Positions 1 to 48,206 are shown, counted from the stretch's first letter. The stretch: 64,000 bases of DNA from Phallusia mammillata (GCA_965637545.1 OZ281501.1:19592001-19656000), one strand, 5' to 3'. Notes: generated from the sequence alone by a model not told the origin. Numbers and translations are program-made.

Positions 1-155
1 GTAAAAGTCAGCAATCATGCAAAGAATAGAAACTGCTTCGATAAATTTACAGTAAAGGTTTATAACCGGAGTTTAACACTACATAGTATAATTTACATCA
101 TGTAAATCACACAGTTAAAACGTCACCTAGCAAACAAACAAATTCTCTGTCCATT

Positions 156-2882
156 TTACAACGAGAAGAATCGTTGCAAGGAATATCCGATGAGTGCAGG
201 GAGAGACATCATCAGCAAACTCTGCAATGGCATCACAGACCCGTTGCCTGCCAACAAAACTTTGTTTAAATACTCGACCAAGTGTGTTTCGTTTCGTAGT
301 TAAAGCCGCAAATCACATTAAGTGCGACTTCATTTGTCAAAAACGCTTTTGAACGTAGAATTCTGGGTATTTATATTCTGAGGCAGTTGTTTATTGCATT
401 TTATATCAGGACACTTTTTTGTCCAGTTCTTATTCAAAGTGAATTCTTAAAGTTTATTAAACTTTTCACAAATCGACTTTGGTGCAAAAAGTCACAGAAA
501 AAGTAACTGGGTTACACCGGTATGTTTTATGGTAACACGCACCTTGGTTGCAACCATTCCCTGTGCAGGTTCTGTTGCACACTCGGTAATCGACCCCGTC
601 AACAGTAGTCTCGTTGCAGCTGTTTCCTTGGTCGAAGAAAGCGCATCCTCTGGTGACGTCTCGGCTGAAACCTTCTCTGTCTTCACCTGAACCGCGAAAG
701 TTTGGGTCAGAAATGTCATTTTCCACTTTCATTGACAAGTTTGCTTACCGATTTCCCTGACAAAGCAATATCGATGAGCAGGGCTTGTGCAGACAGTTGC
801 CACTGGTGGGTTATTTAGGCAAATGTCGTATCCAGCCACAAGTCCGTCAAAGCTGGATGAAGACCTTTGAGTACTGCAGTCCACACATCTGCTTCGGGTT
901 GCTGTAAAAAGATTGTCAACGAACTTTATAATTTCCAAACTGGAAACAGCCCTGAAGTGTTTATGCAGAACAGCGATCACGGAATACTTATAAACCATAA
1001 TACGCCAGCCCCATTTAAGGAGACTTATCTAATCAGCCGGTCACCAAGCATTCCCATATATGAAAAGACATAGGCTAGAGAAATCTAGCATGCAGTGGGA
1101 TTCGAAGCAATTTCAGGGGCCATTTTCACGTCCTGCGCTCTATCAACTGTTCTACACAGGCTCAGTGTCGAGCCTTAATTCAATCGGTCTGACGTACAGA
1201 GAAATATTTCCAAACTAGACAGTTTTAACGACCAAATTGAAACTTACGAAATCCGACGTTGCATCCGTCTTCAGTGCAGCTTTCCTCGCATGTCACTCTC
1301 AATGCGCTGCTTGTTCCAAGTGTTGCGTTAGTGCAAGAGTTCACAGATGTTGTGGAATCACGGCATCCGCGTTCAGTTGATATAATCCAAACATCGGGAT
1401 TAGCTGAACAACAATCCACAATAAAGCACAGAGAAAGTTTGATTCAACCACGAACCACGTACCTTGGTGGCGAAGATCGCCCTTTTCCTGATAGTAGTAG
1501 ATAATTTTTGAGTAGCACTGATTCGCGGCACCTTGGCAAAGTGTTCTTCCGGTTATGGTGTTGCACGAGTGACCATTTCCGGTTCCTGTGCATTGTACGC
1601 ACTGGAGAGCTCTATCTGCGGCCGCTACAACTCCATCAGCTGCAAACATTCACTTGTCAACCTCGCTGTTTTCCATATTATTGCTTGTGCTTACGTGTTC
1701 CTGTGTTGCAGTTATCGGTCTGACAAGTGCTGGTGCAAGTCTGTTCAGTGTGGTCGGTGAATCTGGTGTCAGAAGGGTTGGAAAACTCGCATCGGTCTTG
1801 GAAGTTGTTGGTTGTTGTGCATCCGCGGGTTATTCGGCTCGTCACCACGGCCCCAACTACAAGAAATCGAAAGAACTAGTTTGAAATCGTGTTTACCGGG
1901 AACAGAACATTATTTAATTTCTTCTTCACTCTCAGTTTTGAAATAACTTACCGGCATCGTACAGGGTAGTTCTAGTTGTTGTGCAGTAAACATCTGCAGC
2001 CGGCGAGTCAATAGAGCAAGCTGTTCCTGCTGTTTTTGTGGCACAAGTGCTGTCAGTTTCCTGGGAACATTGGACGCAAGAACGACGGGTAACTGTCACT
2101 GTGTGTGGAAAGTTTGATAAACTTGTGATGATCGCAAATCTTATGATGATATTTACCTTCAGTTGTACAATTAATTCCCATGAAATTTCCCACACAATCA
2201 CACAAACCAGTGAAGTAATTGCAATAACCTCCGTTCATGCATGTTGATGCGCATGACATCAAGCTGTCTGTAAGTTGCAGCAATAAGTGATTTATCTTTT
2301 AATGTTTAGTGATGAATGTTGTCAGGTATCAACTTACTTGCCGCGAGAGTGTTGCAATTATTAGTTGTACAAGTGTGGCGGCAGGTTGTTATTTCAACTC
2401 CGTTGCCGAATGCTACTTCGCATTTTGGCGATGCTGGGACAGTGTCTATTGTTGGGTCAAAGTCACTTGCAGCATCTTCTCTGGTTCTCGTCATCATGCT
2501 CAGAACACCTAAACACATTTATCAAGACATGCAACTTCAAGTTCACTAACTCAGTTCACTTAATCTCACCGTCGCGGAAAACGCTTGTGGTTAGGCAATA
2601 TGGAGTCATAGATGAAGTAGCAGGTGGTGGGGTTAAATCAGTGGCGTTGTCGTAGCAATGGTTGTCGGTCTGGTCTTCGTCGTATAAACCCGTTGTCGCG
2701 CACACTATGCATGACCTGTTTGTTTGGCCTGAAAAAATTTCGTATTGTTAGACGACCTTGCGTCGTGTTTTAATATTTCTTAAGAATTCTAGACATTCAC
2801 ATTTTTTTACAAATAGCAACTTACCATCGACCGAAACGAAGCAGGCAACCGTCAACATCACACAAACTATCGACAACTTCAT
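156..2882 (-). CDS. GPI-anchored cysteine-rich surface protein, copy A: signal peptide, LU(Ly6/uPAR/quiver-like) domain 1, EGF, LU2, LU3, LU4, GPI signal; 11 exons, roughly 500 aa
   Basis: Spliced manually on the minus strand with GT-AG phase-1 introns. It starts MKLSIVCVMLTVACFVSVDG. It has four repeats ending C-x3-C-x4-CN (TCRHTCTTNNCN, TCTSTCQTDNCN, TCEESCTEDGCN, VCNRTCTGNGCN), three of them with RGC. The EGF is CASTCMNGGYCNYFTGLCDCVGNFMGINC. The tail AGNGSVMPLQSLLMMSLPALIGYSLQRFFSL* ends at TAA 156-158. Confidence 0.8.
942..1205 (-). mobile_element. tRNA-derived SINE inserted in intron 8 of LU gene copy A
   Basis: Absent from the equivalent short intron of copy B. Flanked by the direct repeat ATTTCCAAACT (931-941 and 1206-1216). 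The minus-strand head gagcctgtgtagaacagttgatagagcgc...ttcgaatccccactgcatgctagattt and body catatatgggaatgcttggtgaccggctga match the element at 34459. Confidence 0.7.
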
Positions 2883-4176
2883 TCTTGTCACTTATTCAAC
2901 GTTTTTAAATTAAACAAAAAGTTTCCTACAACCTGAAAAACAGAACAACAATAATTTGTGGTGAAAAGATCGGATTCTGATAAACTAAACTATATCTTAG
3001 CTTTTTTAGTTATAAATCTAAAGCTGCAAAACAAATGTAACATTGACAAGTTTTGATCGCGTTCCGTCGAACCTGAAAGTAAAAATATCAGTATTAGACA
3101 AACAAGTGAGCTATTATCTTTGACAAAATTAAAATTGTAATACTTCATCTTTTCTCCTCCCAAAACGCCCAAAACAATCTAATTTTTCTGTCACAAAGAT
3201 GTTTATCAATTGTTAATCGTTTATTTTTTTTACCCGCGAACGCAAATATTAAGTTGAACAGTAAAGTGATGGTAAGGAGGCATCGATTAACCTTTCGGTT
3301 TTCGAGTGAAGATGCCCCCCAATAAACGTAATTAAACATATAAAGTTACAGGGTTAATGTGATTTGAAAGAAGTTCCCGCCGTGTTGTTCAACAATATTT
3401 ATTTAATTTGATATTTGCTGTTGCAAATCTGTCTACAAATTTATTTGGGTATTTATTTTTATTGTATATTTTGCTTTTGCAAACCATTTATTTTTATGGT
3501 ACTTGGTGTTTGCAAGCGGCTGCAAATTTTTAGGGTAAAGGTTTTTGTTTTTATTACTTTTCATATTAAACAAACGTTGAGTAAAATATGTTACCTTGAT
3601 TGGATGGATAATTAATGTCGTTTTAAGTTTCTGTTTTTTTGCTATGACAAAGCATTGCAGAAGTTAAAAAGTTTTAATAAACTCTGGTTTTGATTGGTGC
3701 CGCTGTACATGGACAAATTGAAATGCTTTTACAATTGCCATCAGTTAAATGGCGTGTTAGGTGAAGTTTATTCGCCGAATTTGCTGCTTCAACGTTTAGT
3801 TTGAGGATATTTGGTGACGAATTTAAAGCTACTCTTAAAGGTTTTCCAAACAGAAAAGTTTTTGGTTCAAGTTTTCGTTGCGAGAAATTGTCCGGTTTTA
3901 TGTGTAAATTCGATTTTGGTTTAATTGTTTTTGTGGTCAATTAAGACCACTTACTGAACAATAATTCACTTGGGCACTTTTGTTTAAACGGTAACTTTTT
4001 AACATTACTGGTGTGGATATTTTGTAACAGGGTCTGCCCATATTCCAGCGACGTTCCGCTTTTAAATATTCGGGTTTTATGTGAATTTGAAAACGTTGCC
4101 GGGAAACAGAGCATCCTTAGCAGCGTCATGTCAATACCATATTATTTTGTGTTGCTTAATACGGGTTGGTTTAAAA

Positions 4177-4417
4177 CAGGGGTGTGCAACCTGCGGCCCG
4201 CGGGCCAAATGCGGCCCATTGATTAAAGGTTATACGGCCCGCAGTGACGCTTGGATTTCAAATGCACTGCAAACGAGTCCAATTATTATAAATTTTTGAG
4301 CAGATTAATGTGTCCGGTGCTATTTTTCTGCGACCTGACAATATGCGACTGGAATTAAAAGGTAAAATCACCTGTAACTGTATTTAACCCCAATGTGACA
4401 AAGGTCGCACACCCCCG
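4177..4417. mobile_element. hAT-type MITE (241 bp)
   Basis: TIRs caggggtgtgcaacct / aggtcgcacacccccg and a perfect 8-bp TSD gtttaaaa; no ORF. Confidence 0.85.
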
Positions 4418-5506
4418 GTTTAAAACATCGGTTTGGCTAAAATTTTGGAGGTGCCATATAAAGTTTTTGTGAGGTTTGGAGCGTTTTAAACTTGTTTCCA
4501 CTCAACGATCGGAATGACCGTTAGTTTGTGTTAGGTCAGGTTTCATAAATATTACGGTGCGGCAAGATTTTAATTTGATTTGGTTTCTCTAAAATTTAAG
4601 TGGAGCAGAAAAATGTCCTAAGTTTAAGTCGCCGGCGTGAGTTACACGGATGAGTGATTATGACACGGTTGGCATGGCAACGGGCAGTGTCGGGAGAGTT
4701 TTTTCATGCGGAACGATACGTTGAAACATTTTCAACCCACGCGCGAAGTTGGCAGGTTGTACGGTTAATTCCGAGATAATATGGCGCGTAACTTACCGAT
4801 CAAACTTTGGAATTCCAGTGGTGGGCATTTAAGTGGTTAATATAATGCCAACGTGAGTCGGGCCCTGCACATTAGACATACTTACCGGACATTGGCATAC
4901 TACACATGTTTCTTTGCACTGCAACCTATTTAATTGTTTCGATGCAGACTGAAACAAATGACGTTTTTTACGGTTTGTTGTCGACAGTTTTAAGTAAACC
5001 CCCGCCATTTTTGTTAAGCCCATATTTAGTAAGTTTTGGTGGATTTTATGTTGATTCTAACTTCCCCATACATTGAGATTGAGGGTGCAAAGGTGCGGGA
5101 AATTACAGTGTGCAATATCTTCAAGGGTCAGAAAACTAAAGCTGAAGCGGAAAAAAATCACAAAGCAGCTTTTTGAATCAGCGTGAAGCAAGCAAGCATA
5201 AATCGTTGTGTGAATAAGCTGCATGCACGTCACATTGCGGAAAGCAGGTTTTGCGATTAATAGAAAGCATTTGTATTTTGCGGCACACAGAAAACATTCA
5301 ATTATCTTGCCAACTGAAAAAAGTTAACAATCATGCAATGAACGACCAACTGTGCGCTCAATATTCACCAAATTGAAGCAAGCATTAGCGAATAAGCATT
5401 GACTACAAGCATTTCCCTTGCTGGGATAAAATAATAATTATTTCTACATCATGCAAATCACACAGTTAAAACGTCACCCAGCAAACAAACAAATTCTCTG
5501 TCCGTT

Positions 5507-8116
5507 TTACAACGAGAAGAATCGTTGCAAGGAATATCCGATGAGTGCAGGGAGAGACATCATCAGCAAACTCTGCAATGGCATCACGGATCCGTTGCCT
5601 GCAAACGAAACTTTGTTGAAATACTTGGTCAAGTGGGTTTTGTTCTTTAGTTAAAGCATTAAACTTTTGTGAAGTGCGACTGTGGCGGTTGGACACGTCC
5701 CTTGTGAGAAGTAGTCACGAGTAACATACAGATGCAATCAAAACGGGGGAGTTTGATGGCTAATACTTGTGCGTAAGGATCGAAAACCCAAATAGTTAAA
5801 ACTTTATTACAAACCCCATTTCTTAACAGTGGAGTTATAAATTGTTACTGGCTAGTTAAGACATCGGTATGTTTTAACTTAGCACGCACCTTGGTTGCAA
5901 CCATTTCCGGTGCAGGTTCTGTTGCACACTTTGTAATCGACCCCGTCAACAGTAGTCTCGTCGCAGCTGTTGCCCCGGTCGAAGAAAGAGCATCCTCTGA
6001 CGACTTCTCGGCTGAAACCTTCTCTGTCTTCACCTAGACCAAGAAAGTTTGGGTCAGAAACGTCACTTTTAACTTTCACTGACAAGTTTGCTTACCGGTT
6101 TCCCTGACGAAGCAATATCGATGAGCAGGGCTTGAGCAGTCAACTGCAATTGATGGGTTGTTCAGGCAAATGTCGTATCCAGCCACAAGTCCGTTGATCG
6201 TTAAAGCGTTATTAGTGGCTGCCGCGATGGATCTTTGAGTACTGCATTGCACACATTTGCTGCGGTTTGCTGTAAAAAGGTGTCAACACGCGTTAGTATT
6301 TCCGAAGTGGAAACGTTTTAAGGACGGAAGTGAAACTTACGAAATCCTACGTTGCATCCGTCTTCAGTGCAGCTTTCCTCGCATGTCACTCTCAATGCGC
6401 TGCTTGTTCCAAGTGTTGCGTTAGTGCAAGAGTTCACAGATGTTGTGGAATCACGGCATCCGCGTTCAATCGATTCAATCATAACATCAGGATCAGCTGA
6501 ACAATAATCCACAATAAAGCACAAAGAAAGTTTGATTCAACCACGAACCACGTACCTTGGTGTCGAAGATCGCCTTTTTCCTGGTAGTAGTAGATGATTT
6601 TTGAGTAGCACTGATTCGCTGAACCTTGGCAAAGTGATCTTTGGACTGCGTTGTTGCACGAGTGGGTGTCACCGGTTCCTGTGCATTGTACGCAATAGAG
6701 AGCTCTATCTGCGGCCGCTACAACTCCATCAGCTGCAAACATTCAATTGTCAACTTTGCTGTTTTTCATATTAATGCTTGTGCTTACGTGTTCCTGTGTT
6801 GCAGTTATCGGTCTGACAAGTACTGGTGCAAGTCTGTTCAGTGTGGTAGGTGAATCTGGTGTCAGAAGGGGCGGAAAACTCGCATTGGTCTTGGAAGTTG
6901 TTGGTTTCTGTGCATCCGCGGGTTACTCGGCTTGTCACCACGGCCCCAACTACAACAGACGTGAATAAAAATACTTTTTTTCCGTCTGAGCTTGTCACAG
7001 CATTTGCTTTTGTGCATTTTTAAAATATCTTACCGGCATCATACAGGGTAGTTTTAGTTGTTGTGCAGTAAACATTAGCAGCCGGCTGATTAATAGAGCA
7101 AGCTGTTCCTGCTGTTTTTGTGGCACAAGTGCTGTCAGTTTCCTGGGAGCATTGGACACAAGAACGACGGGTAACTGTCACTGTGTGTAGAACGTTGAAT
7201 AAATTTGTGATGATTGCAAATCTGATGATGATATTTACCTGCAGTTCCACAATCAGTTCCACTCCAATCTCCCACACAAACGCACTGACCAGTGAAGTAA
7301 TTGCAATATCCGTTGTTCATGCATGTTGATGCGCATGACATCAAGCTGTCTGTAAGTTGCAACAATAAGTGATTTGTTTTGTGATGTTTATTGATAATGT
7401 TGTCAGGTATGAACTTACTTGCTGTGATCGTATTGCAATTGTCAGTTGTACAAGTGTGGTGGCAAGTTGTCAGTTCAACTCCTTGGCTAAAATCTGTTGT
7501 GCATTTTGGCGATGCTGGGACGGTGTCTATTGTCAAGTCAAACTCGTCATTAGCTGCAGCATCAATTGGTCCTCTAAACACGGATGTCGGGATACCTGAA
7601 AAAAAAAAAAATTTTGAGAAAATTTGTAATTTCGATCAGCAAAAGAAACATCTCACCGTCTAGGAGTGTGAACCTGGTGAAGCAATATGGAGTGACAGTT
7701 GATATCATCGCAGTATTTTCCATTGTTGCGTTGTCATAGCAATGGTTATCAGCCTGGTCTGCGTCGTAATAGCCGGTTATGGTGCACGATCTGCAATTTC
7801 TGTCGACATTGGTTTGCCCTGAAAACAAGTTCGAAAAAAAACTCACAGAAATGCTATACAAACGAAATTTTAATAACTCATACTTTTGTGTTGGGAAAAT
7901 ATCATATTAATTAAATGTAAAGTGTTGAACAATTTTTGTGGTCGTTGTTTGGCGTGGAAAAGTGTTATATTATGAAAACACCTTACATCATATATTAAAT
8001 ACTTATAAAAAAAACCAGACATTTACATTATTTAACTTTTGTTAACCTTAAAACTTACCATTGACAGAAACGAAGCAGGCAACCGCCATCATCACACAAA
8101 CTGTCGACAACTTCAT
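5507..8116 (-). CDS. GPI-anchored 4xLU + EGF surface protein, copy B (tandem paralog of copy A)
   Basis: Same 11-exon structure. It starts MKLSTVCVMMAVACFVSVNG, has the same cysteine frameworks and ends VSFAGNGSVMPLQSLLMMSLPALIGYSLQRFFSL*. No stop was seen in the spliced frame. Confidence 0.8.
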
Positions 8117-8461
8117 TATTATCACTTATAATTACTGTTTTCGAATTAAACAGGAATATTTTTGAACCTTCACAAAATGATTCCAGATTAATATAGTAAA
8201 ATATGCCTAATTCAACTTTTCTAATACTCTTGCTTCCAGAACTAATTAACGCAAAGGTTGATATTACTCCTGCACTCAAACACAAAACGCAGGTTGTCAA
8301 CAAATGTTATCTGTTCTATCACACGTATTAAGAGCTTGCCCACATTATGAGTAATTATCAAATATAGTAACAAACAGTGGGTGGGTATTAGGTGGGTGAA
8401 CCACAAACACGTACACACAACCTGTGACACCAACCTAAACTGCCATAATAATTATTTCGAG

Positions 8462-23485: not shown

Positions 23486-25946
23486 TTACCTTTTGTCCCT
23501 TGAGTTGCAAGTTCCACTCAGATAAAGTTTTGCTGATTTTAGTCGATGCACAGTTTCATTTTTACCAAGCATCGTGATAATATCAACTATCGAAGGCCCC
23601 TCCTATAATTGAGTGTATTTAATGTCTAGCAGTCACCTTCAGTATCATTCCACCAACCTTCCTGTCGATCAGAATCATGCGCAGAAATTGCATAAGTTTT
23701 CCAAAATTTATGTCCTGCAGTTTGGAAAGATTTCGAAGTTCCTTCATTACAGAAACCAAATCACTTTCCAAATTACTTTCTTCGAGAAACCTAAGCACAA
23801 ACAATGATTTTTGAAAACAGAAATTTAACATGAATCTAAACTCATTTATTATTGAAATAAGCTATTGCTGCCAGGCATAATGTATGACTAAGTATTGCTC
23901 ATCCAGCAGTTTTATTGTAAACAATCGACGTTTCGACGTCCTATACAAGACGCCTTCATCAGGATAATGACATTTATTATTGTTTACTTTTCAACTTTTT
24001 CAAGTGCTTGAAGAAACTCTGTTTGCGCCGGCAAATTTTCTGTGTCCGTCCTCACCCACAGGTATTTGTATTCATCATCAGTAATGTCAAGTATTCTTGT
24101 AATGTGACCCTGCAAATATTTGGTAACAAAATGCACAACTGCAACAATATTTCAAATTTACCTTTCGAACATCAAGAAGTGTTTCAATGTATTTCTGTGA
24201 TTTTTCATCCAAGCTCTGTGGGTTTATTACGCAGTTGTCCCCATAATTTTTAATAACTTTGTTGTAAACATCTTTCACTAGTTTTGCAAGTTGTTCTGGA
24301 TGAGCATTTGTGATTTTTCTTTCAGTTAAAACTCGACCAAACTCTTCAAGTTTGCTAAAGTTCATGCGAACGTCAGAGTGAATGATCTATTAAAATATCT
24401 AATAAACAGTTATGTAAAATATGATTTCATATTCATTGCCAAAAGAAAATACCTCACTAGGACTAAATCTTTGGATAAGGATTTTCAAAACCTCTTCATA
24501 ATTGTCATTACCGATCGGAAATTTATCGGTTAAATCTGGAAAAGCTGATCCATGGCTTGCAATAAAATTTAACATTGTGGCTGGGGAATATCCTTTGTTA
24601 CGATATTGTTCAACAAACACATCACCCTGAAAAATCCAAGTAACATTTGTAATAAATCCTCAATCACAACAAGAACCATTCACCTGTCGTTTCGATAATT
24701 TTGAACCATCAGGATTCACAAACAGAGGTAGGTGTAAATACTGTGGTGGATTCCAGCCAAAATATTTATACATTATTGTATGTTTCACAGTTGATGTAAG
24801 CCACTCCTGACCGCGGATAACATGACTGATTTGCATGAGATGGTCATCAACAACATTAGCTAGATGGTAAGTGGGGAACCTAAACATTAAACTTGTTTGT
24901 TCTACTGCTTGGTGAATAACAATATTCACGCACTTACCCATCTGTCTTCAGCAACACTGGATCACCTTCAAGCTGGGATATATTGTAGCCAACTTTCCCA
25001 TGCAACATGTCCTCAATGAACTCTGTTTCTTCTGGTAACTTTAATCGGATTACATAAGGGATGCCCATTTCCATCTGCTGCTGGACTTTGTCTTTGGATA
25101 AATGTCTACATCTGTTGTCATATCTACAGAAAAAAATCAAATCAAAGACGAAAACTGCACATTGTTTTCAGTTATACCCTGCCTGTTTATTAAGGCAAAA
25201 TATATATTTCTGTTATTAAAAGAAAGGGTTTATGCTTTTTACCTGTTTTAGTGAAACAATCTAATATTCTACTGATCAGAAGCAAGAATCTTTCTTTTAT
25301 ACATTTTATTGTCTGTGGAAGATTCGTTAAATAACTGTTTCAGTGTTACCTTGTTTGTTCTTTTCTTGTTTTTTGACCTTTCTTTAACAAAGCCAGTCGT
25401 TGTTGTGAACAAAAACATTGGTAGGCTGCCCCACTTTCTACAAGCTGGTTTGCAAACCTGTAAAAAATAAGTAAGTCAGATTCTCAGCAGACAACCAGCA
25501 TTTAAATTGAGACTGACTTATTGTAATGGTGCAACCTCTCGCTTTGTATGTATGGACCATGACTACCACCATGCACACTACTTTCATCTGGAACAATTCC
25601 AACCCATTTTAGAGACGACAACAAATTGTCGACGGAGTTTGGAATAAATCTGCTCTGGTCAGTGTCTTCGATTCTTAAAATAAATTTCCCATTGTGTTTT
25701 TTAGCGAAAAGGAAGTTATACAAAGCTGTCCGGAGTCCTCCAATATGCAAGAAACCTAAGCAGATGAAATAAAACTAATAATTAGTCACATAACATTACA
25801 ACTTTGCACAAATAACCTGTTGGGGACGGTGCAAAGCGAACCCTCACTGCTTCTTCACTTTGAATTGATCTCACAGGAATCAAAAACTTTAATTTATTAA
25901 ACTTGTATAATTGTTTCAATTCGTGACGGGTGAATAACGCTTTCAT
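23486..25946 (-). CDS. EARS2: Mitochondrial glutamyl-tRNA synthetase
   Basis: [55 protein letters not shown]-like segment, [53 protein letters not shown] (KMSKS-like) and a C-terminal [13 protein letters not shown] anticodon-binding segment. Confidence 0.95.
23921..23968 (-). ncRNA. Minimal type I hammerhead ribozyme motif (Penelope-type) in an EARS2 intron, sense to the pre-mRNA
   Basis: The minus strand reads attatc CTGATGA a GGCGTCTT gtat AGGACGTC GAAA CGTC^ gattgt: both core boxes, an 8-bp stem II with a tetraloop, a palindromic ACGT stem III, a GUC cleavage triplet and a short stem I. Confidence 0.7.
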
Positions 25947-47880: not shown

Positions 47881-48206
47881 ATAGAGCTCTTCTGCCAAAT
47901 GTAATTTTATTCCGACGTTTCGACGTCCTATACAGGTCGCCTTCATCAGGGTAAATAACACTGAATGCGACTAGTACAGTGCACGATAAACAAAGGAAAA
48001 GGGAATGGAACGCAAGTACATCACAACGCAACGAAAACACCGCGCGATTACGAATGATTGGGCCTCTAACCTTTGAGCAGGTGCATGTAGCACGCTGAAA
48101 GCATCACGTCTGTTTGTCGCATTCAGTGTTATTTACCCTGATGAAGACGACCTGTATAGGATGCCAAACCGTCGGAATAAAAACACATTTGCCAGAAATG
48201 CTCTAT
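47881..48206. ncRNA. Inverted pair of ~90-bp Penelope pLTR-like arms, each carrying a hammerhead motif (left intact on -, right degenerate on +)
   Basis: Arms at 47881-47971 and 48116-48206. The left arm reads on minus ttatttacc CTGATGA a GGCGACCT gtat AGGACGTC GAAA CGTC^ ggaataa. The right arm has CTGATGA but gccaaacc replaces GAAA. Confidence 0.65.

What the first reader, a model, noticed from the sequence alone, without database searches (positions are those of the whole stretch)
156..8116. Tandem pair of GPI-anchored proteins with four Ly6/uPAR-like domains and an EGF module
Seen: two intact paralogs with the architecture SP-LU1-EGF-LU2-LU3-LU4-GPI signal, each LU domain split over two phase-1 exons. 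Known: multi-LU GPI proteins (uPAR, CD177, C4.4A, TEX101) act in adhesion, immunity and sperm function, but I know of none with an EGF inserted between LU domains. Inference: a lineage-specific surface receptor/ligand family, possibly for gamete, self/non-self or microbial recognition. The array may continue left of the window, since 1-120 mirrors the 3' flank of copy B.
Basis: partly seen in the sequence, partly recalled or inferred. Interest (0 to 1): 0.7.

Follow-up and report, generated by a model that had tools for sequence, protein, structure and literature searches.

The report
Sea-squirt four-LU plus EGF surface proteins
Two intact neighbouring sea-squirt genes, at least one of them transcribed, encode probably lipid-anchored surface proteins built from four Ly6/uPAR three-finger domains with an EGF module after the first; they are the last two copies of an eight-gene tandem array of an unstudied family found so far only in sea squirts.

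Summary
Window 156-2882 (copy A, 509 aa) and 5507-8116 (copy B, 519 aa) are intact 11-exon minus-strand genes; every intron is GT-AG and phase 1. All ten introns of copy B are removed at the predicted borders in RNA-derived contigs from runs of two studies, and one of them also in a third. The layout is signal peptide, LU1, EGF, LU2, LU3, LU4 and a short hydrophobic GPI-type tail.

Domain evidence:
- Pfam hits on single exons.
- Profile-profile homology among the four LU modules.
- AlphaFold models of the closest public relative (Ciona XP_002128273.1, 36-37% identical), which match uPAR, CD177, C4.4A, TEX101 and Lypd6 domain by domain, and EGF modules for the insert.

The array continues left of the window: seven young copies plus one older one. 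The scan already examined those upstream copies (note s1-353684). Relatives occur in Ciona, Phallusia and Styela, all unnamed or misnamed, and I found no paper on them.

The array is a lineage-specific expansion. LU2, LU3 and the tail are homogenised; LU1 persists as two old types and lacks the Cys4-Cys6 disulfide. Purifying selection dominates.

Function is inferred only: a GPI-anchored binding receptor. I rate it a new variant of a known kind, of moderate interest.

The spliced proteins were never sent whole to any search or folding tool.

The parts
156..2882 (-). Copy A, whole coding span (11 exons, 509 aa)
   Evidence: Intact model with GT-AG phase-1 introns. No contig on exons 1-3 in the four runs laid. 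Exon 4 (2190-2267) is present without mismatch in one X8 contig.
2825..2882 (-). A exon 1: start codon and signal peptide
   Evidence: Hydrophobic N-terminus, mean Kyte-Doolittle 2.57 over residues 4-18. Donor GT, phase 1.
2570..2728 (-). A exon 2: LU1, N-terminal half
   Evidence: Aligns with LU1 of the family. Cys4 column is not Cys.
2338..2508 (-). A exon 3: LU1, C-terminal half, ending in the C-x4-C-N motif
   Evidence: Cys6 column is not Cys. Family LU1 vs LU3/LU4 by hhalign: 94-96% probability.
2157..2267 (-). A exon 4: EGF-like module (6 Cys)
   Evidence: Pfam EGF_2, E=4.1e-4, 21.1 bits against a cut-off of 22.1. Symmetric phase 1-1 exon.
1952..2098 (-). A exon 5: LU2, N-terminal half
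   Evidence: Ten-Cys framework across exons 5+6.
1695..1856 (-). A exon 6: LU2, C-terminal half
   Evidence: Profile A1 of this exon retrieved the ascidian family.
1463..1639 (-). A exon 7: LU3, N-terminal half
   Evidence: Pfam UPAR_LY6, 25.0 bits against a cut-off of 24.8, E=2.7e-5.
1248..1403 (-). A exon 8: LU3, C-terminal half
   Evidence: Ten-Cys framework. 92% identical to copy B at protein level.
749..901 (-). A exon 9: LU4, N-terminal half
   Evidence: Model. 100% identical over 49 residues to the copy in L002, a gene-conversion tract.
543..686 (-). A exon 10: LU4, C-terminal half
   Evidence: Pfam UPAR_LY6_2 (Lypd6 type), E=0.017.
156..247 (-). A exon 11: GPI-type tail and stop codon
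   Evidence: Small residues, a short spacer, then a 12-14-residue hydrophobic stretch (KD 1.81) running almost to the C-terminus, with no cytoplasmic part.
5507..8116 (-). Copy B, whole coding span (11 exons, 519 aa)
   Evidence: Intact model. All ten introns skipped in RNA-derived contigs of X1, X2 and X5; one X5 contig of 1717 nt covers the 3' UTR to exon 1.
8059..8116 (-). B exon 1: start codon and signal peptide
   Evidence: Joint 7818/8059 seen in X1, X2 and X5.
7657..7818 (-). B exon 2: LU1, N-terminal half (second LU1 type)
   Evidence: 52% identical to A exon 2. LU1 dS 0.77 between A and B.
7419..7595 (-). B exon 3: LU1, C-terminal half
   Evidence: Cys6 column is Pro. Joint 7595/7657 seen in four runs.
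7239..7349 (-). B exon 4: EGF-like module
   Evidence: Pfam EGF_2, 24.1 bits against a cut-off of 22.1, E=4.7e-5; also teneurin/tenascin-type EGF models.
7034..7180 (-). B exon 5: LU2, N-terminal half
   Evidence: Weak DUF753 hit, E=0.06.
6788..6949 (-). B exon 6: LU2, C-terminal half
6556..6732 (-). B exon 7: LU3, N-terminal half, with a variable finger-1 patch at 6622-6671
   Evidence: UPAR_LY6, E=7e-4. RNA contigs differ from the window, and from one another, in this patch.
6341..6496 (-). B exon 8: LU3, C-terminal half
   Evidence: QVR, E=0.049, on profile positions 47-86.
6096..6269 (-). B exon 9: LU4, N-terminal half, with a 7-residue insertion in finger 1 relative to A
5890..6033 (-). 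B exon 10: LU4, C-terminal half
5507..5598 (-). B exon 11: GPI-type tail and stop codon; the 3' UTR runs on to about 5401
   Evidence: Tail identical in protein to copy A. Contigs end at 5401-5402 in X1 and X5.

Best explanation
Each gene encodes a secreted-pathway protein that is most likely held on the outer face of the cell membrane by a GPI anchor. A chain of four three-finger (Ly6/uPAR, LU) domains projects from the membrane, and a rigid EGF-like module sits between the outermost domain (LU1) and the rest.

By analogy with uPAR, C4.4A, CD177 and TEX101, it should act as a binding receptor or adhesion molecule. It would capture an extracellular protein partner on the fingers and concave sheets of its LU domains. 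Having no cytoplasmic part, it would act through neighbours in the membrane or by presenting its ligand.

The genes belong to an ascidian-restricted family that grows by local tandem duplication. Within this array, gene conversion keeps LU2, LU3 and the tail nearly identical. The distal LU1 persists as two old sequence types: A-like, and B-like as in copy B. The EGF C-terminal half and finger 1 of LU3 and LU4 carry most of the other differences. So the copies probably share a common stalk and differ in what the head binds.

Shown: gene structure; splicing and transcription of copy B; domain identities; tandem array; taxonomic spread among ascidians; mosaic divergence; purifying selection.

Inferred: GPI anchoring; surface location; ligand binding; division of labour between head and stalk.
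For: - Intact models and phases.
- Spliced transcripts of copy B: all ten joints in X1, X2 (one study) and X5 (a second study), one joint also in X8 (a third).
- Pfam on single exons: UPAR_LY6 at 25.0 bits against a 24.8 cut-off (A exon 7), EGF_2 at 24.1 against 22.1 (B exon 4), plus weaker Lypd6, QVR and DUF753 hits.
- Full-length relatives at 28-38% identity, E down to 3e-96. The same cysteine columns.
- hhalign among the family's modules: LU2/3/4 97-98%, LU1 vs LU3/4 94-96%, LU1 vs LU2 72%, EGF control below 1%.
- AlphaFold model of Ciona XP_002128273.1 (pLDDT 69, cores 75-87).
- Foldseek on that model: uPAR 1.7e-9, CD177 2.9e-9 over 496 columns, C4.4A 3e-6, TEX101 1e-3.
- Per-domain matches: LU3 to uPAR D1 Z 10.1 (rmsd 2.3 over 81 residues); LU4 to Lypd6 Z 8.7; LU2 to C4.4A Z 7.4 and TbRII Z 7.6.
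- LU1+EGF folded alone (pLDDT 79, pTM 0.72). An unbiased search of 48,161 chains gave CD177 Z 8.3 and TEX101 Z 8.1, and EGF modules for residues 103-143.
- Intron inside each LU exon pair lies at the loop-2 hairpin tip, as stated for canonical LU genes in PMC6600238.
- C-terminal tail features.
- Array of 7+1 copies plus two distant paralogs.
- dS is 0.6-0.9 between the two LU1 types against 0.05-0.22 in LU2-LU3. Omega is mostly 0.2-0.6.
- Species-specific clade at 100/100 support.
Against: - No GPI predictor was available, so the anchor rests on simple rules and family habit. In canonical LU genes the GPI signal sits in the last LU exon; here it has an exon of its own.
- The structures are of a 36%-identical Ciona relative, not of the window's own proteins. 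LU1 of copies A and B lacks a disulfide (Cys4-Cys6) that the modelled LU1 has.
- Sequence similarity to solved LU proteins is not significant (Lypd6B E=0.068, CD177 E=0.44).
- No ligand, tissue or phenotype is known, and no paper was found.
- Copy A's exons 1-3 had no contig in the four runs laid.
Confidence: 0.6

Rival explanations
1. Individual-specific recognition determinant, for allorecognition or gamete self/non-self. The variable head and finger patches would differ between individuals and decide which partner is accepted.
For: - Tandem array with two old LU1 types kept apart despite conversion elsewhere.
- In the LU3 finger-1 patch (6622-6671) the RNA contigs of three samples differ from the reference and from one another, and match no reference copy exactly.
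- Other LU proteins act in fertilisation (Bouncer, TEX101; cited).
Against: - Average dN/dS is below 1 in every LU domain. Only short, noisy peaks exceed 1.
- The contig variants may be assembly mosaics of near-identical paralogs.
- No tissue information. The known ascidian self-sterility genes are of other families (own knowledge).
Confidence: 0.12
2. Secreted or shed extracellular-matrix, tunic or egg-coat component, not a membrane receptor. The hydrophobic tail would be removed without anchoring, or the protein would be released after anchoring.
For: - The tail is only moderately hydrophobic (KD 1.81 over 12 residues).
- EGF-containing cysteine-rich proteins are common matrix and egg-coat components (own knowledge).
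- Many LU proteins are secreted (PMC13719153).
Against: - All full-length relatives keep a C-terminal hydrophobic tail preceded by small residues. That conservation would be pointless for a simply secreted protein.
- The tail is nearly invariant among copies.
Confidence: 0.13
3. Modulator of ion channels or nicotinic receptors, like Lynx1, SLURP or Drosophila Quiver. It would act in cis on a channel in the same membrane.
For: - Pfam QVR hit on LU3 of the Ciona relative (32.9 bits against a 27.3 cut-off), and weakly on B exon 8.
- Lynx1 and SLURP are among the fold matches.
Against: - Those modulators are single-LU proteins. The best matches here are the multi-LU receptors.
- Fold and profile similarity do not carry function.
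Confidence: 0.07
4. Decoy or co-receptor for TGF-beta-family ligands. The LU modules would mimic receptor ectodomains and the EGF module would play a Cripto-like part.
For: LU1 and LU2 of the model align with ActRIIB, TbRII, AMHR2 and BMPR ectodomains at Z 5-7.6.
Against: - These Z values lie in the range the tool calls common for any shared fold.
- LU receptors score higher for every domain except LU2 in the whole-protein search, where TbRII is tied with C4.4A (Z 7.6 against 7.4).
- No sequence signal.
Confidence: 0.04
5. Complement regulator of the CD59 type, protecting the animal's own cells from its pore-forming complement components.
For: CD59 is among the fold matches (Z 4.0-4.6). Earlier notes on this genome report other LU genes combined with sushi and vWA modules, not tested here.
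Against: CD59 is a single LU domain and scores low here. Nothing specific links this family to complement.
Confidence: 0.04

Closest known systems
CD177 (four LU domains, GPI-anchored, human neutrophils)
   Same: Four consecutive LU domains, an N-terminal signal peptide and a GPI-type tail. It is the best independent fold match for LU1 (Z 8.3) and aligns over 496 columns of the whole model.
   Different: No EGF module. Sequence similarity is not significant (E=0.44). It belongs to the mammalian 19q13 cluster, and its N-terminal LU lacks the 7-8 disulfide (PMC6600238), whereas copies A and B lack 4-6. The multi-domain state very probably arose independently.
uPAR / PLAUR (three LU domains, GPI-anchored)
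   Same: Top Foldseek match (E 1.7e-9). Domain 1 fits LU3 at Z 10.1, rmsd 2.3. Two exons per LU domain with phase-1 introns. Its natural ligand is an EGF-like module, that of urokinase.
   Different: Three LU domains that close around the ligand, with the EGF module in trans. Here there are four LU domains with the EGF module in cis between LU1 and LU2. Three-LU genes were not found below lungfish and tetrapods, apart from one teleost (PMC6337849).
C4.4A (LYPD3), TEX101, Haldisin (two-LU GPI proteins)
   Same: GPI-anchored multi-LU surface proteins. Fold matches at Z 8-9.4. The first LU domain has only eight cysteines.
   Different: Two domains and no EGF. The missing disulfide is 7-8, not 4-6. 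Vertebrate-specific.
Public ascidian gene models: Ciona intestinalis XP_002128273.1, XP_002129979, XP_002126174, XP_009859787, LOC108949271, LOC100182096; Phallusia mammillata CAB3262712.1; Styela clava LOC120329939, LOC120330278, LOC120329855
   Same: True family members at 28-38% identity over the full length. Same SP-LU-EGF-LU-LU-LU-tail layout and the same cysteine columns.
   Different: LU1 has all ten cysteines in these. One Styela model carries the LU1-EGF pair twice. None is characterised, and their automatic names (comC, G surface protein, MEGF10, cell death abnormality protein 1) are misleading. No one-to-one orthology to copies A or B.

Membership tests
Ly6/uPAR (LU, three-finger) domain superfamily | Three-finger beta fold: a disulfide-rich core with three loops | tested here: met
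   Tested on models of the 36-37%-identical Ciona relative, not on the window's own proteins. LU3 Z 10.1 (uPAR D1), LU4 Z 8.7 (Lypd6), LU2 Z 7.4-7.6 and LU1 Z 8.3 (CD177) in an unbiased search, where the top 36 rows were all three-finger proteins.
Ly6/uPAR (LU, three-finger) domain superfamily | Framework of 8-10 cysteines ending in C-x4-C-N | tested here: met
   Ten conserved Cys columns in each of the four modules across the family. Copies A and B have 8 / 10 / 10 / 10, each module ending in Cys-Asn. Cys8 and Cys9 are three residues apart, not adjacent.
Ly6/uPAR (LU, three-finger) domain superfamily | Match to the curated sequence profiles (Pfam UPAR_LY6, QVR, UPAR_LY6_2) | tested here: inconclusive
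   Met for LU3 only: A exon 7 at 25.0 bits against 24.8, and QVR on Ciona LU3 at 32.9 against 27.3. Sub-threshold or absent for LU1, LU2 and LU4. These are tied to LU3 by hhalign at 94-98% (LU1 vs LU2 only 72%). Half-domain exons limit this test.
Ly6/uPAR (LU, three-finger) domain superfamily | Gene structure: two exons per domain, flanked by phase-1 introns, with the internal intron at the tip of loop 2 (PMC6600238) | tested here: met
   All introns are phase 1 and are confirmed in transcripts of copy B. Internal introns map between the two long strands of each module.
GPI-anchored proteins | Cleavable C-terminal signal: small omega-site residues, a short spacer, a hydrophobic stretch and no cytoplasmic tail | tested here: inconclusive
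   Simple rule-based check only. The features are present and conserved in relatives. No dedicated predictor and no experiment.
EGF-like domain (Pfam EGF_2, tenascin/teneurin type) | Six-cysteine pattern, profile match and small two-hairpin fold | tested here: met
   Six conserved Cys. EGF_2 at 24.1 bits against 22.1 for B and 21.1 for A. Model residues 103-143 match the ADAM22, Notch-1, epigen and epiregulin EGF modules at rmsd 1.9-2.8 and 26-33% identity.
Vertebrate multi-LU cluster (PLAUR, LYPD3, LYPD5, TEX101, CD177, PINLYP) | Detectable sequence relationship or orthology to cluster members | tested here: not met
   The family profile against PDB sequences gave CD177 at E=0.44 and no uPAR hit. 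The exhaustive exon-6 profile search returned ascidian proteins, unlabelled fragments and two unrelated repetitive proteins, and no vertebrate LU protein.
Vertebrate multi-LU cluster (PLAUR, LYPD3, LYPD5, TEX101, CD177, PINLYP) | N-terminal LU domain lacks the 7-8 disulfide; the protein is made of LU domains only | tested here: not met
   LU1 of A and B lacks Cys4 and Cys6 and keeps 7-8. Other family members keep all ten. An EGF module is present.

The most novel reading that the evidence does not exclude
The variable head (LU1 in two ancient types, the EGF C-terminal half, and the finger-1 patches of LU3 and LU4) makes this array a polymorphic, individual-specific recognition system of sea squirts, used in allorecognition, gamete compatibility or pathogen sensing. 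Gene conversion would shuffle patches between copies to create new specificities. A linked possibility is that the cis EGF module docks onto the LU domains as urokinase's EGF-like module docks into uPAR, giving a self-occupied receptor that a competing ligand opens.
Probability: 0.1. Interest if true: 0.8.

Novelty: new variant of a known kind. Interest (0 to 1): 0.42.

Why it matters
LU-domain specialists hold that this domain is almost never mixed with other modules and call it only a "proto-module" (PMC6600238). They also find that proteins with three or more LU domains arise late, in lungfish and tetrapods (PMC6337849).

This family shows that sea squirts, the closest invertebrate relatives of vertebrates, independently built four-LU, probably GPI-anchored proteins and shuffled an EGF exon into them. 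In this array the outermost domain has also dropped a core disulfide. That echoes the vertebrate multi-LU receptors, but the bond lost is a different one.

It gives a natural comparison for how multi-LU receptors are assembled and stabilised. It also gives a set of unstudied surface proteins with homologs in Ciona, where knock-outs and expression mapping are routine.

Tried and rejected
- **Peptide motifs in a script.** I used coordinates only afterwards.
- **Pfam on half-domain exons.** This gave no hit for LU1, LU2 and most of LU4, so those rest on profile-profile and fold evidence.
- **Family profile against PDB sequences.** Only non-significant LU hits.
- **Word-index protein search with the full-length profile.** Only six ascidian proteins, and it missed known members, so it says little about other phyla.
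- **ESM Atlas.** Only sub-0.8 leads, all LU-like: DUF753, Toxin_TOLIP, UPAR_LY6.
- **Literature.** Six searches, by LOC numbers, accessions, automatic names and topic words, found nothing on the family. A seventh, on ascidian sperm GPI proteomes, was scanned by title only.
- **Foldseek with LU1+EGF alone.** No match at E<=0.001. The exhaustive aligner was needed.
- **Pseudogenes or mis-modelled ORFs.** Rejected: spliced transcripts and omega well below 1.
- **Pervasive positive selection.** Not supported.
- **The X8 contig joining B exon 3 to A exon 4.** I read it as most likely an assembly path through a stretch at the start of exon 4 that the sequence shows to be identical in A and B, not as read-through splicing. 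This is unresolved.
- **Upstream copies c4 and c1.** For c4 the exon-3 acceptor and phase, and for c1 the last exon, could not be modelled. Both lie outside this window.

Full report
**1. What is in the sequence**

Reading the minus strand of window 1-8400 and translating it shows two series of open segments rich in cysteine. With exon borders set by coordinates, and copy A projected onto copy B by alignment, each series gives an 11-exon gene.

| Exon | Copy A | Copy B |
|---|---|---|
| 1 | 2882-2825 | 8116-8059 |
| 2 | 2728-2570 | 7818-7657 |
| 3 | 2508-2338 | 7595-7419 |
| 4 | 2267-2157 | 7349-7239 |
| 5 | 2098-1952 | 7180-7034 |
| 6 | 1856-1695 | 6949-6788 |
| 7 | 1639-1463 | 6732-6556 |
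| 8 | 1403-1248 | 6496-6341 |
| 9 | 901-749 | 6269-6096 |
| 10 | 686-543 | 6033-5890 |
| 11 | 247-156 | 5598-5507 |

All twenty introns are GT..AG and all are in phase 1. There is no internal stop. The products are 509 and 519 residues.

**2. Are they real genes?**

One look-up of public runs and one laying of four runs from three studies on window 2150-8149 gave contigs that skip all ten introns of copy B at precisely the predicted borders:
- 5599-5889, 6034-6095, 6270-6340, 6497-6555, 6733-6787
- 6950-7033, 7181-7238, 7350-7418, 7596-7656, 7819-8058

Runs X1 and X2 (one study) and X5 (a second study) show all ten; X8 (a third study) shows one. One 1717-nt contig runs from the 3' UTR (from 5401) to exon 1. 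Since the introns are gone, these contigs come from RNA. Copy B is transcribed and spliced as modelled.

Copy A's exons 1-3 drew no contig in these runs, which does not show silence. A's exon 4 appears without mismatch in one low-depth contig of X8.

Among the intact copies, dN/dS is mostly 0.2-0.6. These are genes under purifying selection.

**3. Domain identities**

The joined proteins were never typed, sent to a search tool or folded. The step "search or fold the whole spliced protein" was therefore left out.

Single-exon Pfam results:

| Exon | Family | Result |
|---|---|---|
| A exon 7 | UPAR_LY6 | 25.0 bits against a cut-off of 24.8 |
| B exon 7 | UPAR_LY6 | E=7e-4 |
| B exon 8 | QVR | E=0.049, C-terminal half of the profile |
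| A exon 10 | UPAR_LY6_2 (Lypd6) | E=0.017 |
| B exon 5 | DUF753 | E=0.06 |
| B exon 4 | EGF_2 | 24.1 bits against 22.1 |
| A exon 4 | EGF_2 | 21.1 bits |

To obtain referenced full-length proteins, I searched a ten-copy profile of exon 6 against 1.84 billion representatives. There were 21 hits. Several are 499-533 residues long, and local BLASTP aligns them with A and B end to end at 28-38% identity, E down to 3e-96.

A 17-sequence family alignment shows ten conserved cysteine columns in each of four modules and six in the EGF module. Copies A and B have 8 / 6 / 10 / 10 / 10. LU1 lacks Cys4 and Cys6, which is one disulfide.

Profile-profile comparison ties the modules together:
- LU2, LU3 and LU4 with one another: 97-98%
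- LU1 with LU3 and LU4: 94-96%
- LU1 with LU2: 72%
- the EGF module as negative control: below 1%

**4.

The closest relative (P0004, Ciona XP_002128273.1) was folded with the family alignment. Mean pLDDT was 69 and the domain cores reached 75-87.

Foldseek ranks the multi-LU receptors first: uPAR E 1.7e-9, CD177 2.9e-9 over 496 columns, C4.4A 3e-6 and TEX101 1e-3. Single-LU proteins follow.

Domain-wise alignment:

| Domain | Model residues | Best match | Z |
|---|---|---|---|
| LU3 | 276-379 | uPAR domain 1 (rmsd 2.3, 81 residues) | 10.1 |
| LU4 | 379-485 | Lypd6 | 8.7 |
| LU2 | 167-272 | TbRII / C4.4A | 7.6 / 7.4 |
| LU1 | about 19-123 | ActRIIB / TbRII | 6.8 / 6.7 |

Because LU1 and the EGF module were barely tested in that search, they were folded alone (pLDDT 79, pTM 0.72).
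- Foldseek alone gave no match at E<=0.001.
- An exhaustive comparison with 48,161 representative chains put CD177 (Z 8.3), TEX101 (8.1), GPIHBP1 (7.7) and Lypd6b (7.1) on top. All of the first 36 rows were three-finger proteins.
- Residues 103-143 matched EGF modules of ADAM22, Notch-1, epigen and epiregulin at rmsd 1.9-2.8.

The domains do model as three-finger folds. The caveat is that the models are of a relative, and the array's LU1 has one disulfide fewer.

**5. Gene-structure hallmark**

The 2019 review of LU proteins states that an LU domain is typically encoded by two exons flanked by phase-1 introns, with the internal intron at the tip of loop 2 (PMC6600238). Here every LU module follows this rule. 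The internal introns map to the turn between the two long strands of each module.

The EGF module is a single symmetric phase 1-1 exon lying in what would be the phase-1 intron between two LU exon sets. That is the signature of exon shuffling. One Styela model carries the LU1-EGF pair twice, so the pair behaves as a cassette.

**6. Ends of the protein**

The N-terminus is a typical signal peptide. The last exon encodes small residues, a short spacer and a 12-14-residue moderately hydrophobic stretch that runs almost to the C-terminus. It has one charged residue and no cytoplasmic part, and the mature body has no transmembrane-like segment. All full-length relatives end the same way. This is what a GPI signal looks like, but no predictor was available, so anchoring is inferred.

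**7. The array and its evolution**

The window is G000:C8:19592001-19656000 of a 240-Mb assembly. Upstream DNA was fetched.
- The array holds seven close copies about 5 kb apart, plus one divergent copy. All are on the minus strand, and all show the same exon layout where the exons could be found.
- Two more divergent paralogs lie 13.5 Mb away on the same contig.
- No family exon lies right of 8300.
- A, B and three upstream copies model as intact. Two upstream copies could not be fully modelled.

Divergence is mosaic:
- LU1 falls into two types, A-like and B-like, with dS 0.6-0.9 between them.
- LU2 and LU3 have dS 0.05-0.22, and the tail is almost invariant.
- Some exon blocks are identical between non-adjacent copies.

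This is the pattern expected from gene conversion that spares the head. Amino-acid change concentrates in LU1, the EGF C-terminal half and finger 1 of LU3 and LU4. Sliding pN/pS exceeds 1 only in short, noisy windows.

In a maximum-likelihood tree the five intact array copies form one clade (100/100) with the divergent tandem copy as sister (82/87). The distant pair is a clade of its own, and the backbone between genera is unresolved. These are lineage-specific expansions, not one-to-one orthologs.

**8. Taxonomic range and prior knowledge**

Sources name the relatives as Ciona intestinalis (at least six genes), C. savignyi, Phallusia mammillata and Styela clava. One further relative comes from an unlabelled transcript contig. 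All are "uncharacterized" or carry automatic names that do not fit.

The exhaustive exon-profile search found no member outside ascidians, apart from short unlabelled fragments and two unrelated repetitive proteins. A 53-position profile has limited reach, and the word-index search is not exhaustive.

No paper on the family was found.
- The 2026 survey of invertebrate LU proteins did not include tunicates and does not mention EGF.
- The review states that LU domains occur almost only alone or as LU-only repeats.
- Three-LU genes were not found below lungfish and tetrapods, apart from one teleost.

The scan itself has met this family before. Note s1-353684 covers the five upstream copies of the same array and reports the Cys4/Cys6 loss, which I confirmed for A and B.

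**9. How it most likely works**

I commit to a GPI-anchored, outward-facing binding receptor. LU2-LU4 would form a conserved stalk, and the LU1-EGF unit would be the variable, ligand-selecting head. It would act like uPAR, C4.4A and CD177, which bind extracellular proteins and work through membrane neighbours.

Architecture, transcription of copy B and evolution are shown. Anchoring, location and binding are inferred. The rivals are an individual-specific recognition system, a secreted matrix component, a channel modulator, a TGF-beta-ligand decoy and a complement regulator. Each is listed with its test.

**10. Verdict**

This is a new variant of a known kind: a multi-LU GPI-type receptor with a shuffled-in EGF module, confined as far as seen to sea squirts. 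It is present in databases but unstudied. I rate the interest as moderate. It matters mainly for the evolution of LU-domain receptors and as a candidate recognition family in a model chordate.

Noticed in passing
window 4167-4427: A roughly 260-bp MITE-like element with 26-nt terminal inverted repeats (85% complementary), lying between copies A and B. There are more than 1,600 first-look candidates in the genome at about 87-90% identity, one of them inside the same array upstream. RNA-derived contigs touch it with loose ends.
   Followed up: partly
window 6622-6671 (copy B exon 7, LU3 finger 1): RNA contigs from three samples differ from the window at 12-14 bases plus small indels. They also differ from one another, and they match no reference paralog exactly (at best 14 of 17 listed positions). 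This is either a hypervariable or converted patch, or an assembly mosaic of paralogs.
   Followed up: partly
window 2190-2267 joined to 7419-7709: One low-depth contig of run X8 joins copy B exons 2-3 (7 mismatches in exon 3) to copy A exon 4, skipping 5151 bases with GT..AG ends. It could be an assembly path through the stretch at the start of exon 4 that reads the same in A and B, another allele or paralog, or B-to-A read-through splicing.
   Followed up: no
L002:6166-8635 (upstream copy c4) and L004:1318-3394 (upstream copy c1): In c4 the exon-3 acceptor cannot be placed in phase 1, and the simple projection gives a frameshift. In c1 no last (tail) exon was found downstream of exon 10. Both may be damaged copies or modelling failures.
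   Followed up: partly
P0031 (Styela clava LOC120329855, 658 aa): This relative carries the LU1-EGF pair twice (LU-EGF-LU-EGF-LU-LU-LU), showing that the head cassette can duplicate as a unit.
   Followed up: no
P0019 (Styela clava LOC120330278), LU3: This relative lacks Cys7 and Cys8 in LU3 (8 cysteines). That is the same disulfide that vertebrate multi-LU proteins lack in their first domain, but here it is missing from an internal domain.
   Followed up: no
window 23921-23968 and 47881-48206: Earlier first-reader notes on this window report hammerhead-ribozyme-like motifs in an intron of an EARS2-like gene and upstream of a myosin gene. I did not examine them.
   Followed up: no
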